From Basidiobolus meristosporus CBS 931.73 (taxonomy: Eukaryota > Fungi > Basidiobolomycota), in assembly GCA_002104905.1 (NCBI GenBank), contig MCFE01000122.1, forward strand, positions 1 through 64,000: a stretch of DNA of 64,000 bases, written 5' to 3'. The stretch's first letter is position 1; every line of letters starts with the position of its first letter. The notes beneath the pieces are model-generated. The model was given only the letters and a program-made list of their open reading frames with translations, was not told the origin of the DNA and did no database searches. Position numbers and translations under genes: made by a program. Positions 4,858 to 21,758 of this stretch are shown here, one piece after another.

Positions 4858-6167
4858 TTAACCCAAGTTCCAGGGTAAATCAGCAACTCCGGGGAATATG
4901 GCGGTGCGTTTCTCCGGGCAATAACCGATTAGTTGAGCCATTTCGGGGCAGCTAGCTGAGTAGCCGTGGCTGTGAAGGGAAGTAATGAGCAACAGTGCTG
5001 CATTGAAGCATTACAGTTTACTTGCCTTTGTCTGAAGGGGTTCCTAGACAACTTCTTGTCTAATAGAGAACCATGGCATCCGTATAGATCTCGTCTGAAT
5101 GGCTCTAGCGAATTTACACTCTAACAATGGGATTAATCAGGGAGCGGGCTATTACTTGCAATAAGCACTCATACCTCGCCAACTGTAGGAAGATTGTTCA
5201 AGCTACCATCTATACCAACATAGTGGAATCTAGGGCGTCCACAGGTCATCAAATACAAATCTTCAACAACCGAAAACCTAGAGCTCTTACCTCTCTTCTG
5301 GAATCCCCAGTGCTACTCTGTGAATTTCAAAGAACCTCGTTCTTTTAAATTCAAAACCAACGACCGTGATATTCTTAGGGTAGCTCCCAGTTACTTCATG
5401 AAATCTGCACAGACTAAACAGCACGTTCTCATACGAGTCCCTAGCGTGCTCCTCAGTTGTGGTTCGATCCGAAATTTCCCGGGTATCCAGCAATCCCATC
5501 CTTTCTGCCAACATCTGAGCATCAAGACAACGTAAGTAAACAAGTAGTAAAACTCTCGTCAAGGGGCTGCTCGCGAAAGAATATTTCGCCTCAAGCGACT
5601 CGGATAACTACTACTTACCCAGTAGCTTTGCGCCTCGCTTCGTGCACCAGCGTTGTTTCTGGTTTGCCCACTAAGAAGGCGAAACAAGCTTTAGTTACAA
5701 TGCGCCAAGCTAGCTTTTGGCTGAGATAAGCGTTTCACAAACCCGCTAAACACCAACAACGAGTTACTTCTATCCTTAGCGAGAGAAACGCCTTTTTCGA
5801 TATGTTTCAAGAATACGCTCACTTGGCCATTTTTTTGGAACTCCTCTAGTACCCAATTCTTATCCGATTCTAGCTGCTTTCCATACTCGTCACCTTTATA
5901 AATAGCGTGACCGGCAACAATAATAATTTCATCTAGATCACTGTATCTCGGTGAAGTCTTGGAGTTCTCTAAGCCGTTTACGAAACTGATTTGGTCCGGT
6001 CCCCTTGTTTTATCGTTAAGGAGGAATACGTGGATTAGAACAGTAAGAATCAACAAAGTCGCGAGAATAAGTATCAGAGTGATGCGCTTTGTGGGTCTGG
6101 TGAGAGGCCTAGAATATTCGGATATTGGTGGGATGTTAATTCGTATGCTTTGCGCTTTCTGATTCAT
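4858..6167 (-). CDS. DUF218-like (YOR238W-like) single-pass membrane protein, multi-exon
   Basis: An N-terminal TM helix is followed by IIVAGHAIY, LLVFSG, TTEEHARDSYENVLFSLCRF, ITVVGFEFKRTRF and DLYGCHGSLLDKKLSRNPF...HGYSASCPE. Confidence 0.75.
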
Positions 6168-17135: not shown

Positions 17136-17719
17136 ATATTATTAACTGTGTTCTCCACACCTAATAGTTGGAAATATTGATATCTAAATAATGGCTCCCA
17201 ATAAGATTATCATATTCACTCAGTCAAGATGGTATTTTCAGCATTACGTACTTTCATAGAAAAAGCAGTGTACGAGTGCATGCTGCTTCGGATTTCCAGA
17301 TCATACATGTTCGAAACAAAAAAAATTGGAGTGTTGGCGTCATGCCTTTGTTATGGCTTGACTCTGAGTCATGTAGTTTCAAGTGGAGATCATTACTCAA
17401 CCGCGCGGAGGACAAATAGAGATGTTCCAGCGGTCGGAAGATTCACCTGAGTGAAGGGGTGCACGATGTATATACCACTACAACCGCAGTTCAACCGTAA
17501 CTCGCGTTTGGATGACACGACAACGTGAAGGCATCAGCACATTGATCGATCATGATAAAATTAAGTTCCACGAAATTTGACAGTCCCATCAGAGAAGTGG
17601 CAACTGATGAAGCAAATAATTGGAGAAATATATGTGGAGTTGAGAGGAGGGAAATCAATGGCCAATAAATGGCCACTGGACTAGCATCCATTCATACTCG
17701 TTCAGAGAGACCGCATCCC

Positions 17720-17806
17720 CAGAGCATTCATTGAGAGCACCCATTCTCATATACAGAGCATTCATCGAGAGCATCCATTCTCATATACAGAGCATTCATA
17801 GAAAGC
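17720..17806. repeat. 34-bp tandem repeat, ~2.5 copies
   Basis: CAGAGCATTCAT(T/C)GAGAGCA(C/T)CCATTCTCATATA occurs at 17720 and 17754, with a partial copy at 17788. Confidence 0.92.
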
Positions 17807-18149
17807 TACCATCATCATAGTCAGCACGATCTCACGTCTTTCCTTTCACATGATTTTGGAAATTTGTTTGAGGTCCCACGGGTGAATAATACCACAGTGA
17901 AAATTTTCTTGATGACGATGGTGATGATGATTAAGCCTCTTTTGAAGATTTAATCAATTTAATATCGAAAATATATAGATTATTTTGGTGAATTTGGGAA
18001 CCCCCTTTCAATCGAAGTTTGTATACCCCTCCCCGGAGTAGTGAAAAATTAGCTTTCCTTAAAGTCAACCTCAATACTTGTTTTTCGCCTTAACGCATCT
18101 ACCTCGTTCCCTTATTATCGGAAACTATCTTGCGTTTGTATTTGTGAAT

Positions 18150-20417
18150 ATGAAGAGCTCCACTGCCGCTTGGATTGCTGCCGGTTTGGTCGTTGCCACC
18201 GGTGTTGGTTATGCCGTCTACTTTGACCAAAAGCGTAGAAACGATCCTAAATTCCGCAAGCAACTCAGTATGTTTATTTTCCTCGTTGAAATACTCTTCT
18301 CCTCTTCTCCCCCCCCCACTAACCACACTGTGATTCGTTGCCACGATAGAGAAGAGCAAGAAGAAGGCTGATAAAGCCAAGAAGGCTGCTGAGGAGGATA
18401 TGGCTTAGCCAAGCCGCACAAAAGATTGCCGATTGCTTGGCCAAGGTAGCCAGTGAACCTCTTCCTATCACTCCCGAAGAGAAGGAACAATACTTCATGA
18501 CCCAGGTTGGCAAGGGAGAGCAATTGGCTGCTGTTGGTATGTACCTTACTCTATGCTTGATAATATCCCAAATAGCTTATGCCCAGTTGTTTATAGGTGA
18601 GCAAGGTTACGACGAAGCTGCTGTCTGTTTCTTCAAGGCCTTGAAGGTTTATCCCAGCCCCATCGAGCTTGTCATGATCTACCAAAAGACTGTTCCCGAA
18701 CCAGTCTTCAACCTTGTCATGGGAATGATGAGTTTAGAAGTCAGTTGCCATCATTGAGAATGACGTCATCGATTCATTTGCTAACATGTGGGCTCATATT
18801 TTAGCTTAAGCAAAAGCAAGAGAAATTCTATGAAGTCTTCCCTCCTAAGGGCTCTAATGTGGAGCTAAAGGAGCTTATCGAAACCGTTGAAGAAGGAAAG
18901 AAGATTGCCAAGAGAATCTCTCCGTTACCAAGGATTTCGCTGAGGGTGAGACCATCTACACCGAAGAGCCTGATGTTGTTGCTCTCGAGCCTTCCCTTGA
19001 AGGTAAATTCTGCAGCAACTGCCTTGTCAAACTTGGGGAGAAGAAGATTCCCTGTGATAGCTGCAATGTAGTTGCTTACTGCTCAGAGGAATGCCAGAAG
19101 GTCGCCTTCACTGATCATCATCAAGCTCTCTGCACTGGCAACACCTCCGATCCTGACTCCAAGGCCGAGGAATTCTTCAAGCTTTCCAAGGAGAACAAGA
19201 TTCCTATCATGATTGCCAAGTACTTGACTCACATGGTGTACGAGGAGAACCAAAAGCTCGCCGCCGGTGTTGAAGATGAGTACAGTGCCTGGGACCATCT
19301 TGAAAGATTGAAATACCTTGAGATTGTTCCAACTGAAAAGGAGGAGCAGGAGCTTCAAGCTACTCGCGATTTGCTTAGCACCAAGGTTCCTGGTATGGAA
19401 GAATTCCTTAATGACGAGCGATTCCTCTTACTTAAGGGCAAGATGATGTACAATGCCATCGGAATTACCAGTCAAGATGAGGAGGCTGTCAACGATGGCG
19501 ATAACTTTGCCCGTTCCGACCGTCAAGGCCACGTAATTGGAGCTGGCCTCTACAAGATCTCCAGCTATGCCAATCACACCTGTGAGCCCAACGCACGTGT
19601 CACTTTCCCCAAGGGTGACCGCAAGCTTGCTTTGGTTGCTACCAAGCCCTTGAAGGCTGGTGATCAACTCTTCATCACCTATGTGAAGATTGATGGCCGC
19701 AAACACAGCGAGAGAAAGGAAGAGCTTGTAAAGAAATACCGCCTCAAGTGTGAGTGTGACTTGTGCAAGAACGGTGTCGATCCTGAATCTACCTCCGAAG
19801 AAAAGCCCTCTGAAATCGAGTCACTTGAGAAGGAAATCGAGAACGCTTTATACGCTGAGGCCGAGCCCGCCGCTGAGAAGCCCGAAGAACCTGAAGTTCA
19901 AGAGAAGCCAGTAGTCAGTGATACTACCGAATTCCCAGCTGTCACTGAGGCCTATGCCGACGTTGTATCCGAGACTCCAGTTGTTGAGATTTCCGAGAAA
20001 CCTGCTGAGGTACCAGAAACCAAAGATTCAGAGTTCCCAACTCTGACTGAGGCCTACCCTGAGGTAGCTGAAGCCGAGGAGCCCATCAGCTATGCTGAAG
20101 CCGTCAAAGAGCCCGCCACCGAGGAAAGCGAGCCCGTTCCTTCTTATGCCGAGGTAGCTAAGGAGGCCGAGGTTGAGGCCACTGACGACAAGAAGGAAGA
20201 AGCCTCCCAGCCTCTTTCTTTCGCTGATGCTGTCAAGGAGGGAGTTCCCGAAGCCACTGAGCCTATTTCCTATGCCGATACTGTGAAGGAAGGATCAGGT
20301 AATGATTCCCTAAGCGAGTCTATTGAATGCCTAAAGATGACTGAATCGGAATTTGAAGAGGTTGGCGCTGAGTCCAGCGAAGAGCTGATAGCTGAACAAC
20401 CCGCCAAGCAAAACTAA
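18150..20417 (+). CDS. TOM20: Tom20 (MAS20) fused to a MYND/SET (SMYD-type) methyltransferase and an acidic repetitive tail; two 1-nt frame breaks in this sequence
   Basis: Tom20: GYAVYFDQKRRNDPKFRKQL, EEKEQYFMTQVGKGEQL, AAVCFFKALKVYPSPIELVMIYQKTVPEPVF. MYND: CSNC...CDSC...YCSEECQKVAFTDHHQALC. SET: GAGLYKISSYANHTCEPNA...GDQLFITY. Post-SET: CECDLC. Confidence 0.85.
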
Positions 20418-20805
20418 AAGAAAGCACTTTTTGAGTAACTCTTCCACATAACCTCATATTCATCGAAGTACACCGTTTCTCATTCCAAATCAGTTGGCGT
20501 TAACATTTTTCATTGATTTTTGTCTTTCTGTTCCATTCATAATGTACCATTTACCTTAAGGAGACACCATTAAAGCAATAAATAACAAAGCGCGTGTACT
20601 TTGTTCATGATTCCCATCAACCCACTGCACTGATTGGCATTTGGTATAGTGAAGCCTTGCATTGAATTTAATCGAAAAATTTTGTGGTCCTCAAATGTGG
20701 GGATTGAAATCAGAGGGGAAATTTTTGTCATGGCCTCTATTAGAGAGGGTGGTTTTTCTTTTGGCTTGTGGAATTGTTTAGAGCTTCTGTACCAGTATCA
20801 CGACA

Positions 20806-21332
20806 ATGTCTTTCTCCACCATTTTCTCTTCCGGTAATGATTCCATATACGAAGAGCCACCAGGCCCACTCTTGACGTGTTCAATGAAGCACTTGGCTAA
20901 TGCGCGGATTGTTTCTTTATTATTTTATAGTTAGAAATGCTTTCTCCACCCACCTGAAGCTGGTGACCAGTCCAGTGGTTCAAGCAAACACCCGCCTCGC
21001 TGCCGCTTCGGCTGCCCCTGCTCCCGCCACCGGAAGCTTCCTATTATCTGTGCCTATGCGTTTTGTGCACAACTACAAGCTGAAGACTCACAAGGGAACA
21101 CAAAAACGGTATGCACTCGTTCTCTATCCGCCAAAAACTTCTGTACTCACCAAGAACAAACTTAATTTTCAGCTGGAGAAAGACCGGTAACGGACTATTC
21201 AAAAGACAGCAGGTTGGCAAAAGACACTTGAATACCTCCATGTCACCCAAGCGCGGACGTCACTTGCGTAAGACCGCCCATTCCAATACCACTCAAAGAA
21301 GAGTCCTCGAGAAGTTGATGCCTTACGCCTAA
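20806..21332 (+). CDS. Mitochondrial ribosomal protein bL35m (3 exons)
   Basis: A presequence-like N-terminus is followed by YKLKTHKGTQKRWRKTGNGLFKRQQVGKRHLNTSMSPKR...LEKLMPYA*. Confidence 0.88.
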
Positions 21333-21758
21333 ACTCACACTCCTATCTATGCATTCTTTCCTGTACCCCGTAAAAACTGTGGTTCCCCTTCTTTTAGCAT
21401 TTTCCATTTGAACTCGTGAGACTTGTTTGTTCAAGTAGACTTTGAAATAAATCCAAATGTCTCTTTAATTTCTGGATAGTAGGGTCTTTGGGGCCATCAT
21501 GCGGGGAGTGTCGGAGTCGGATATCGAACGTGACCCAAGACCCACCGAAAACTTCGTCTGGCGTCGAACCAGAACTTAACTCATTAAATGATCATGTTGC
21601 ATAGGAGCATGATTACCTAAATCGAACATCAACGATCTTATGATCGTGTTGATTTTTCGTCCAAAAGTGACGTTGGCCCAACCCGAGCGAAGAGTTATTC
21701 CCAGCTCTCTTTCCCACCTCACCTCACCACACCTCCCTTTCCAGACGTAGAGAACAAA

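What the first reader, a model, noticed from the sequence alone, without database searches (positions are those of the whole stretch)
18150..19780. Mitochondrial import receptor Tom20 fused to a complete MYND/SET lysine methyltransferase
Seen: four GT-AG-linked exons carry the Tom20 anchor and TPR, then run without a new promoter-sized gap or a proper Tom20 stop into a SMYD-type module. That module has MYND Cys ligands, NHTCEPN, the xLxITY catalytic Tyr and post-SET CxCxxC. Established: Tom20 faces the cytosol and binds presequences, and SMYD proteins methylate lysines. Similar fusions appear in some non-ascomycete fungal annotations, but I know of no functional study. Inference: an outer-membrane-tethered methyltransferase could modify precursors, TOM subunits or mitochondria-bound ribosomes during import.
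Basis: partly seen in the sequence, partly recalled or inferred. Interest (0 to 1): 0.75.

Follow-up and report, generated by a model that had tools for sequence, protein, structure and literature searches.

The report
Tom20 import receptor fused to methyltransferase
This Basidiobolus gene really does encode the mitochondrial import receptor Tom20 joined in one protein to a SMYD-type lysine methyltransferase, a layout shared by most fungal lineages except ascomycetes, already catalogued in one survey but never studied functionally.

Summary
The fusion is real. The window is Basidiobolus meristosporus. One gene (ATG 18150, stop 20415-20417) has three GT-AG introns. It encodes a Tom20 membrane anchor and MAS20 core, then, with no gap, an N-SET / MYND / SET / post-SET module and a 210-residue acidic tail.

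Contigs of four sequencing runs and the B. ranarum ortholog show both are assembly indels. The corrected ORF is 686 codons. The same indels corrupt the public protein model.

A spliced RNA-type contig joins the Tom20 exon to the SET exon.

The architecture is pan-fungal: chytrids, Blastocladiomycota, Zoopagomycota, Mucoromycota and Agaricomycetes. It is absent from Ascomycota. A 2022 survey lists it as SET "Group 25" with no function, and I found no functional study.

New here:
- No separate Tom20 was found for Basidiobolus.
- The intron at the domain boundary is conserved. In Agaricomycetes it contains a conserved alternative Tom20 C-terminus, which implies two isoforms.
- Catalytic residues are fully canonical in Basidiobolus but decayed in Mucorales.

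An outer-membrane-tethered methyltransferase acting at the import site is the most likely function, but this is inferred.

The parts
18128..20592 (+). Transcribed span seen in spliced RNA-type contigs (minimum extent of the mRNA)
   Evidence: table 8: X3 records 7, 8, 9 and 10 run from 18128 to 20592.
18150..18267 (+). Exon 1: start codon, signal-anchor helix (about 18165-18224) and a basic flank, the N-terminus of Tom20
   Evidence: Pfam MAS20 positions 1-29, E 1e-10. The joint 18267>18350 appears in X3 and X4.
18268..18349 (+). Intron 1 (82 nt, GT..AG). The window has one extra C in the poly-C run at about 18309.
   Evidence: tables 4 and 5.
18350..18536 (+). Exon 2: Lys-rich linker and the first half of the MAS20 core. 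It contains the assembly error: one extra base at 18404/5 creates an in-frame TAG at 18406-08.
   Evidence: frame change. table 4 (one base left out in X1, X2, X3, X4). (gap against B. ranarum).
18537..18596 (+). Intron 2 (60 nt, GT..AG)
   Evidence: table 5.
18597..18739 (+). Exon 3: second half of the MAS20/TPR-like presequence-receptor core
   Evidence: Pfam MAS20 positions 80-131 of 132, E 2e-22. The ortholog model aligns to C. thermophilum Tom20 at Z 15.5.
18740..18804 (+). Intron 3 (65 nt, GTCAGT...CTAAC...AG), exactly at the Tom20/SET domain boundary. If retained, the protein would end five codons later as a Tom20-only product of about 150 residues.
   Evidence: Joint in X3 record 8 with 144 nt on its shorter side. 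Read-through translation. Same intron position in Gamsiella and Agaricomycetes.
18805..20417 (+). Exon 4: helical linker, N-SET, MYND, I-SET, SET core, post-SET, acidic tail and stop. It contains the second assembly error: one base is missing after 18916/17.
   Evidence: table 4 (C or T put in)..
19011..19133 (+). MYND zinc finger with all eight ligands (C4-C2HC)
   Evidence: Pfam zf-MYND, E 5e-7. Ligand table.
19572..19592 (+). NHTCEPN cofactor/active-site motif of the SET core
   Evidence: Aligned to NHSCDPN of SMYD3.
19680..19682 (+). Tyr of LFITY, equivalent to the active-site Tyr of SMYD2/3
   Evidence: alignment..
19749..19766 (+). Post-SET CxCxxC zinc cluster
19767..20414 (+). Acidic tail (25% Glu). 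It carries short motifs conserved with B. ranarum: three or four copies of P-x-S-[YF]-A-[DE]-x-x-K-E and two copies of E-F-P-x-[VL]-T-E-A-Y.
20297..20356 (+). Optional in-frame 60-nt intron in the tail. Both spliced and unspliced contigs are present.
   Evidence: tables 5 and 8 (joint depth 259; unspliced record 9 depth 850). The B. ranarum model splices it out.

Best explanation
The locus is one expressed gene. Its product (686 residues, or 666 if the optional tail intron is removed) is the Basidiobolus Tom20 receptor extended into a SMYD-type lysine methyltransferase.

Shown:
- An N-terminal signal-anchor and MAS20 core that keep every residue invariant among the aligned Tom20 sequences.
- A continuous reading frame, once two assembly indels are corrected, into a split SET domain with an inserted MYND finger and a post-SET zinc cluster.
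- Splicing that joins the Tom20 exon to the SET exon.
- Orthologous fusions in Chytridiomycota, Blastocladiomycota, Zoopagomycota, Mucoromycota and Agaricomycetes.

Inferred:
- The anchor places the protein in the mitochondrial outer membrane as part of TOM. No separate Tom20 was found for Basidiobolus, so this is probably its only Tom20.
- That placement holds the methyltransferase on the cytosolic face of the import pore.
- There it would use SAM to methylate lysines of arriving precursors or of factors docked at TOM, such as chaperones or ribosomal proteins.
- The precedent is yeast Ctm1, a cytosolic SET enzyme that methylates apocytochrome c before import. Ascomycetes, which have Ctm1, are the lineage that lacks this fusion.

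My odds: real fused, expressed protein, about 0.9. Catalytically active in Basidiobolus, about 0.6. Acts on import substrates or TOM-associated factors, about 0.4.
For: - Domains.
- Frame corrections from four read sets and from the ortholog. The corrected length is divisible by three (2058 nt).
- Spliced contig record 8 covers 18596-18739, then 18805-20298.
- Full-length ortholog P0001 of B. ranarum, 665 aa, is 85% identical over the SET module.
- 73 long MAS20-bearing proteins, nearly all with SET. 54 clusters below E 1e-30. The chytrid, Coelomomyces and Dentipellis SET-only models checked each have a fused Tom20-SET model from the same species or genus; for Powellomyces, Polyrhizophydium and Dentipellis a consecutively numbered MAS20-only model points to a split annotation.
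- No short Tom20 from Basidiobolus among 110 hits.
- AF2 model of the ortholog: pLDDT 89, pTM 0.80, one helix running from the Tom20 core into the SET linker.
- Residues 163-477 match SMYD2 residues 5-274 at Z 23, rmsd 2.5 A. Residues 18-150 match Tom20 of the C. thermophilum TOM holo complex at Z 15.5.
- All canonical SET/MYND residues are present in Basidiobolus, and the SAM-contacting Asn is invariant in 49 sequences.
- Ctm1 precedent, and no outer-membrane methyltransferase described in the field review PMC9006661.
Against: - There is no protein-level, localisation or activity evidence.
- The RNA evidence comes from assembled contigs of a run labelled only 'DNA?'. It behaves as cDNA: six GT..AG joints and no intron sequence. 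Contigs cannot prove single-molecule continuity or exclude minor isoforms.
- The active-site Tyr is Phe in about a third of the family (Mortierellomycotina, Blastocladiomycota, Coemansia, some Agaricales).
- The SET motifs are degenerate and post-SET is missing in Mucorales, Smittium and Bifiguratus. So catalysis is not the universally conserved feature.
- The Tom20 searches did not cover proteins of 263-365 aa and depend on shared 5-mers, so a second Tom20 in Basidiobolus is not strictly excluded.
- Substrates are entirely conjectural.
Confidence: 0.6

Rival explanations
1. The SET module is a non-catalytic pseudo-enzyme. It would be a structural or docking domain on Tom20, for example for chaperones, ribosomes or particular precursors through the MYND finger and the substrate groove.
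For:: Tyr is replaced by Phe in many lineages, and the Asn of NH is variable. Mucorales, Smittium and Bifiguratus have lost His/Cys and the post-SET cluster yet keep the MAS20-MYND-SET scaffold. The best-conserved blocks (WDHxER, KVPGxxEF, LKGKxxYN) lie in the I-SET/substrate-groove region rather than in the classical catalytic motif.
Against: In Basidiobolus every canonical residue is intact: NH[ST]CxPN, Tyr, CxCxxC and the invariant SAM Asn. Most lineages keep His, Cys and the post-SET zinc site. Mucorales, where decay is strongest, also have a separate stand-alone Tom20 paralog, so their fused copy may simply be under relaxed constraint.
Confidence: 0.22
2. There are two functional products and the fusion is minor. 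The main Tom20 would come from retention of intron 3 or early polyadenylation, and the SET part would be made mostly from its own transcript.
For: Retaining intron 3 gives a stop after five codons and a normal-sized Tom20. In five Agaricomycete loci the equivalent intron holds a conserved alternative C-terminus. Several annotations split the locus into MAS20 and SET genes.
Against: In Basidiobolus the RNA-type contigs show only the spliced junction. Depth in the intron 2 and intron 3 bins is fully accounted for by exon coverage. The read-through tail is not conserved between B. meristosporus, B. ranarum and Gamsiella. There is no gap or start codon context for an independent SET gene, and the linker is conserved and predicted as one helix.
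Confidence: 0.1
3. The gene is a decaying pseudogene: the two frame breaks in the window are real.
For: The window sequence and the public protein model P0002 both carry the breaks.
Against: All contigs of X1 and X2, plus X4 and the cDNA-like X3, correct both sites. A third indel lies in a poly-C run in intron 1, typical of long-read assembly error. The ortholog is intact. The gene is expressed and spliced.
Confidence: 0.02
4. It is a chromatin (histone) methyltransferase like other SET/MYND proteins, and the MAS20 part is irrelevant or removed.
For: The survey that catalogued the family treats SET proteins as histone methyltransferases. SMYD enzymes can methylate histones in vitro (my own knowledge).
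Against: The N-terminal signal-anchor and the complete, strongly conserved Tom20 core argue for permanent tethering to mitochondria. No nuclear-targeting feature was seen. Most validated SMYD substrates are cytoplasmic (my own knowledge).
Confidence: 0.04

Closest known systems
Fungal SET 'Group 25' (MAS20 upstream of SET), catalogued in PMC9692433 (J Fungi 2022)
   Same: Same architecture and same distribution: present outside Ascomycota and absent from Ascomycota. This gene is an ortholog.
   Different: The paper gives only the domain layout and no function, gene structure, isoforms, catalytic-site analysis or link to the TOM complex. The Basidiobolus member also has a complete MYND finger and a long acidic motif-bearing tail.
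Animal SMYD2 / SMYD3 / SMYD1 lysine methyltransferases
   Same: Split SET domain with an inserted MYND finger, I-SET, NHxCxPN, active-site Tyr and post-SET CxCxxC. Sequence E 1e-15 to SMYD3. Structure Z 22-23, rmsd 2.5 A over 260 residues.
   Different: The TPR-like C-terminal lobe of SMYD1-4 is absent. An acidic disordered tail follows post-SET, reminiscent of SMYD5 (my own knowledge). The N-terminus is a membrane-anchored Tom20. Identity is only about 20%.
Tom20 of ascomycetes (S. cerevisiae, N. crassa, C. thermophilum; PDB 9i7s chain K)
   Same: Signal-anchor, basic flank and MAS20 core. 37-49% identity. All family-invariant residues are kept.
   Different: Ascomycete Tom20 ends in a short acidic tail soon after the core. 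Here the last helix continues into a methyltransferase of about 320 residues.
Yeast Ctm1 (cytochrome c lysine methyltransferase)
   Same: A SET-domain enzyme that methylates a mitochondrial precursor in the cytosol before import and promotes its import (PMC9006661). This is the functional precedent for methylation coupled to import.
   Different: Ctm1 is soluble and not fused to Tom20. I did not compare the sequences, and no relationship is shown. The idea that Tom20-SET and Ctm1 have complementary distributions is a hypothesis.

Membership tests
Tom20 / MAS20 (PF02064) | Significant match to the MAS20 profile over its whole length | tested here: met
   Exon 1 matches profile positions 1-29 (42 bits). 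Exons 2-3 match up to position 131 of 132 (80 bits). The cut-off is 27 bits.
Tom20 / MAS20 (PF02064) | N-terminal single hydrophobic anchor followed by a basic flank | tested here: met
   Read from the translation. The ortholog model has a helix at residues 3-31.
Tom20 / MAS20 (PF02064) | Fold of the cytosolic receptor domain | tested here: met
   Ortholog model residues 18-150 against 9i7s_K residues 22-153: Z 15.5, 37% identity.
Tom20 / MAS20 (PF02064) | Residence in the outer membrane as a TOM subunit that binds presequences | not testable with these tools
   Needs localisation, co-purification with Tom40/Tom22 and binding assays.
SMYD-type SET/MYND lysine methyltransferases | SET domain split by a MYND zinc finger | tested here: met
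   Pfam zf-MYND lies at residues 33-73, between N-SET and the SET core at 127-256. All eight ligands are present.
SMYD-type SET/MYND lysine methyltransferases | NHxCxPN motif, active-site Tyr and post-SET CxCxxC | tested here: met
   Window 19572-19592, 19680-19682 and 19749-19766. Aligned to SMYD3. Tabulated.
SMYD-type SET/MYND lysine methyltransferases | Fold of the catalytic N-lobe | tested here: met
   Z 23, rmsd 2.5 A, 260 residues against SMYD2 residues 5-274.
SMYD-type SET/MYND lysine methyltransferases | TPR-like C-terminal lobe (SMYD1-4) | tested here: not met
   The structural match stops at SMYD2 residues ~274-294, before its C-terminal lobe. An acidic tail follows, disordered just after post-SET in the model, which stops at residue 505.
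SMYD-type SET/MYND lysine methyltransferases | SAM-dependent lysine methylation | not testable with these tools
   Needs an enzyme assay.
Fungal MAS20-SET fusion family (SET Group 25) | MAS20 domain directly upstream of SET in one polypeptide, in a non-ascomycete fungus | tested here: met
   Best relatives all carry PF02064 plus PF00856.

The most novel reading that the evidence does not exclude
Across most of the fungal kingdom the Tom20 receptor is itself a lysine methyltransferase, and the conserved intron at the domain boundary works as a switch. Read-through of the donor gives a canonical short Tom20; this short form has a conserved tail in Agaricomycetes. Splicing gives Tom20-SMYD. The enzyme would methylate precursors as they dock, for example apocytochrome c, taking the place of the ascomycete-type Ctm1, or lysines near presequences. 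That would make lysine methylation a built-in, regulated step of mitochondrial protein import that the ascomycete model organisms happen to have lost.
Probability: 0.18. Interest if true: 0.85.

Novelty: new variant of a known kind. Interest (0 to 1): 0.55.

Why it matters
Nearly all mechanistic knowledge of the fungal TOM complex comes from ascomycetes, the one large fungal lineage that lacks this fusion. The evidence here suggests Tom20 in Basidiobolus and most other fungi carries a SMYD-type methyltransferase on its cytosolic end. If so, a post-translational modifying enzyme sits at the mouth of the import pore, an arrangement missing from the current review of mitochondrial protein methylation. 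This gives a direct, testable route to ask whether lysine methylation is coupled to import, what the substrates are, and why ascomycetes could dispense with it.

Two practical points follow. The public protein model for this gene is wrong in three places: two indel-induced frame detours, which also delete the MYND finger, and a false merge with the neighbouring L35 gene. Several genome annotations also split the locus into two genes.

Tried and rejected
- Pseudogene reading of the two frame breaks: rejected by read contigs and the ortholog.
- The public model's C-terminal fusion to ribosomal protein L35: rejected. No joint links 20297 to the L35 exons. L35 has its own introns (20833-20929, 21108-21171) and is a separate gene in B. 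ranarum.
- A relic of the SET linker (FPPxxxNV) in the tails of ascomycete Tom20: the alignment gives no support.
- A functional short isoform in Basidiobolus: no intron-3-containing contig and no conserved read-through tail. It remains possible as a minor form.
- A stand-alone Tom20 in Basidiobolus: none found. Lengths of 263-365 aa were not covered.
- Literature searches for a functional study: only the one-sentence catalogue entry in PMC9692433.
- The search of earlier findings: nothing at this place and nothing on Tom20 in this genome.
- I could not inspect the predicted Tom20/SET interface, because no coordinates or PAE are available. The high pTM is only a hint of a fixed arrangement.
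- I did not compare the module with Ctm1, because no tool-supplied Ctm1 sequence was available.
Pieces were searched by reference, and the B. ranarum ortholog P0001 served as the full-length proxy.
Full report
**What is in the window**

Translation in three frames and Pfam scans of the pieces by reference give a plus-strand gene.
- Exon 1 (18150-18267) holds the start codon, a hydrophobic anchor and a basic flank (MAS20 profile positions 1-29, E 1e-10).
- Exons 2 and 3 (18350-18536, 18597-18739) hold the MAS20 core (E 2e-22).
- Exon 4 (18805-20417) opens with a short helical linker. It then carries N-SET, a MYND finger (19011-19133, E 5e-7), the SET core (E 2.5e-9), NHTCEPN (19572-19592), the Tyr of LFITY (19680-19682), post-SET CxCxxC (19749-19766) and a 210-residue acidic tail.

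As given, the window is not one open frame.
- In exon 2 the frame set by exon 1 hits TAG at 18406-08, and the MAS20 core continues in the next frame.
- Near 18916 the frame changes again, between the linker and N-SET.

Contigs of four public runs were laid on 17600-21600.
- Two DNA-type runs of one sample (X1, X2), a related strain (X4) and a run that behaves like cDNA (X3) all omit one base at 18404/5.
- All four insert one base after 18916/17. The inserted base is C in X1, X2 and X4 and T in X3, and either one gives Ile.
- X1 and X2 also drop one C from the poly-C run at 18309 in intron 1.
- B. ranarum DNA shows the same two gaps against the window.

With the two corrections the coding length is 118+186+143+1611 = 2058 nt, which is 686 codons. 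The breaks are therefore assembly indels, not a pseudogene.

The public protein for this gene (P0002, Basidiobolus meristosporus CBS 931.73) is 99% identical where it aligns and follows the erroneous frames. It detours through a wrong frame in exon 2 and skips the MYND finger through an invented intron. It is also merged with the downstream L35 gene.

**Expression and splicing**

Run X3 is labelled only "DNA?". Its contigs carry six GT..AG joints and no intron sequence, so I treat it as a transcriptome.
- Its 1667-nt contig (record 8) covers 18596-18739, skips 18740-18804 and continues to 20298. This joins the Tom20 core exon in frame to the SET exon.
- Joints for introns 1 and 2 are also present, and intron 1 is also spliced in X4.
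- Depth in the bins containing introns 2 and 3 is fully explained by exon coverage, so no intron-retaining contig is evident.
- An in-frame 60-nt intron (20297-20356) in the tail is found both spliced and unspliced.
- No joint connects the gene to L35. L35 has its own introns and is a separate gene in B. ranarum.
- Contigs cannot prove single-molecule continuity, so long-read cDNA remains the decisive test.

**Relatives**

- With the SET module as query, all 12 hits carry MAS20. They include B. ranarum (665 aa, 85% identical, uninterrupted), Blastocladiella, Allomyces and Agaricus.
- With the Tom20 part of the B. ranarum protein as query among long proteins, 73 hits appear, nearly all MAS20 plus SET. 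They come from Mortierellomycotina, Mucorales, Endogonales, Kickxellomycotina, Dimargaris, Harpellales, Blastocladiomycota and many Agaricomycetes.
- An exhaustive HMMER scan of 1.84 billion representatives gives 54 clusters below E 1e-30, mostly with the SET part starting at residue 190-230.
- For the named SET-only models I checked, the same species or genus also has a fused Tom20-SET model: the chytrids Powellomyces and Polyrhizophydium, Coelomomyces and Dentipellis. In Powellomyces, Polyrhizophydium and Dentipellis a consecutively numbered MAS20-only model shows the locus was split by the annotator.

The fusion therefore reaches back to the base of Fungi. A 2022 survey of fungal SET proteins lists it as "Group 25", with MAS20 upstream of SET, absent from Ascomycota and function unstudied (PMC9692433). 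Other literature searches found no functional work. The 2022 review of mitochondrial protein methylation names no outer-membrane methyltransferase (PMC9006661).

**Is it the organism's Tom20?**

Among 110 short Tom20-like proteins (82-262 aa), none is from Basidiobolus.
- True stand-alone paralogs exist in Mucorales. In Lichtheimia the next gene is unrelated.
- Stand-alone Tom20 is also found in Ustilaginomycotina and Ascomycota.
- In an alignment of fused and stand-alone proteins, the fused MAS20 domains keep every invariant residue.

The fused protein is probably the only Tom20 in Basidiobolus. The caveat is that lengths of 263-365 aa were not searched.

**Gene structure and isoforms**

The intron at the Tom20/SET boundary has the same position and phase in B. 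meristosporus, B. ranarum, Gamsiella and Agaricomycetes, but is absent in Blastocladiella.

The Agaricomycete "short Tom20" models share a conserved tail. In all three such loci checked, a SET gene follows within 50-290 bp on the same strand. In Collybiopsis, the one locus read base by base, the tail lies inside the boundary intron, ahead of the SET exons.

Reading through the GTAAGT donor gives a conserved extension of about 35-55 residues, then a stop. This holds in five loci from three orders, including Agaricus and Gloeophyllum, where the annotated product is the fusion. The extension is Ser/acid-rich and ends in a GPPSE-x-SS-[QH]-EWD motif. That conservation implies two products from one gene in Agaricomycetes.

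In Basidiobolus and Gamsiella, read-through stops after two to five codons or runs out of frame, with no conservation. I see no evidence for a functional short form there.

**Structure and active site**

An AlphaFold2 model of the B. ranarum ortholog (residues 1-505, 49-sequence alignment) has pLDDT 89 and pTM 0.80. One helix (136-160) runs from the Tom20 core into the linker.
- Residues 163-477 superpose on SMYD2 residues 5-274 (Z 23, rmsd 2.5 A over 260 residues).
- The SMYD C-terminal lobe has no counterpart.
- Residues 18-150 superpose on Tom20 in the C. thermophilum TOM holo complex (Z 15.5, 37% identity).

Across 49 family members:
- Basidiobolus has every canonical residue.
- The full eight-ligand MYND finger is kept in Zoopagomycota and Mucoromycota. 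It is reduced to one zinc site in Blastocladiomycota and Agaricomycetes.
- The active-site Tyr is Phe in about a third of sequences.
- Mucorales, Smittium and Bifiguratus have degenerate motifs and no post-SET.
- The SAM-contacting Asn is invariant.

Catalysis is therefore plausible in Basidiobolus but is not the universally preserved property of the family.

**Mechanism**

The architecture, expression and conservation are shown. The rest is inferred.
- The protein is anchored in the outer membrane as the Tom20 receptor.
- It presents a SMYD-type methyltransferase, followed by an acidic motif-bearing tail, to the cytosol at the import site.
- There it would methylate lysines of precursors or TOM-associated factors.
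- Ctm1 is the precedent: a soluble SET enzyme that methylates apocytochrome c before import and promotes its import.

The main rival is a non-catalytic docking role for the SET scaffold.

**Verdict**

The architecture is already catalogued, so the novelty lies in the system-level reading and in three points added here: likely sole Tom20, a conserved boundary intron with a conserved alternative tail in Agaricomycetes, and lineage-specific decay of the active site.

Noticed in passing
window 18309, 18404-18405, 18916-18917: Three single-base indel errors within about 600 bp of the assembly, relative to contigs of independent runs. Other gene models in this genome are probably corrupted in the same way.
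   Followed up: yes
window 20782-21370 (+): Mitochondrial-type ribosomal protein L35 gene with its own introns (20833-20929, 21108-21171). It is falsely merged with the Tom20-SET gene in the public model P0002. Synteny Tom20-SET / L35 / P16-Arc is kept in B. ranarum (L005).
   Followed up: partly
window 17720-17819: A 34-nt tandem repeat (2.6-2.9 copies, 87-92% matches) lies about 330-430 bp upstream of the start codon, in the presumed promoter region.
   Followed up: no
window 19767-20414; P0001 residues 520-655: The acidic tail carries two kinds of short motif conserved between B. meristosporus and B. ranarum while the spacers diverge: P-x-S-[YF]-A-[DE]-x-x-K-E (3-4 copies) and E-F-P-x-[VL]-T-E-A-Y (2 copies). 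No Pfam match. Possibly docking motifs.
   Followed up: partly
L001 5633-5749; L003, L004, L008, L009 at the equivalent place: In five Agaricomycete genomes the intron between the MAS20 and SET exons encodes a conserved alternative Tom20 C-terminus (...GPPSE-x-SS-[QH]-EWD...). This implies one gene making both a canonical Tom20 and a Tom20-SET isoform. Annotations report one or the other.
   Followed up: yes
L002 (Lichtheimia corymbifera) 5001-5747: Mucorales have a true stand-alone Tom20 paralog (the next gene is unrelated) in addition to a fused copy whose SET motifs are degenerate.
   Followed up: partly
window 18404-18537 (run X3): Several overlapping X3 contigs at 90-99% identity pile up here (summed depth 3451). 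This suggests allelic or paralogous copies of the gene in this duplication-rich genome.
   Followed up: no
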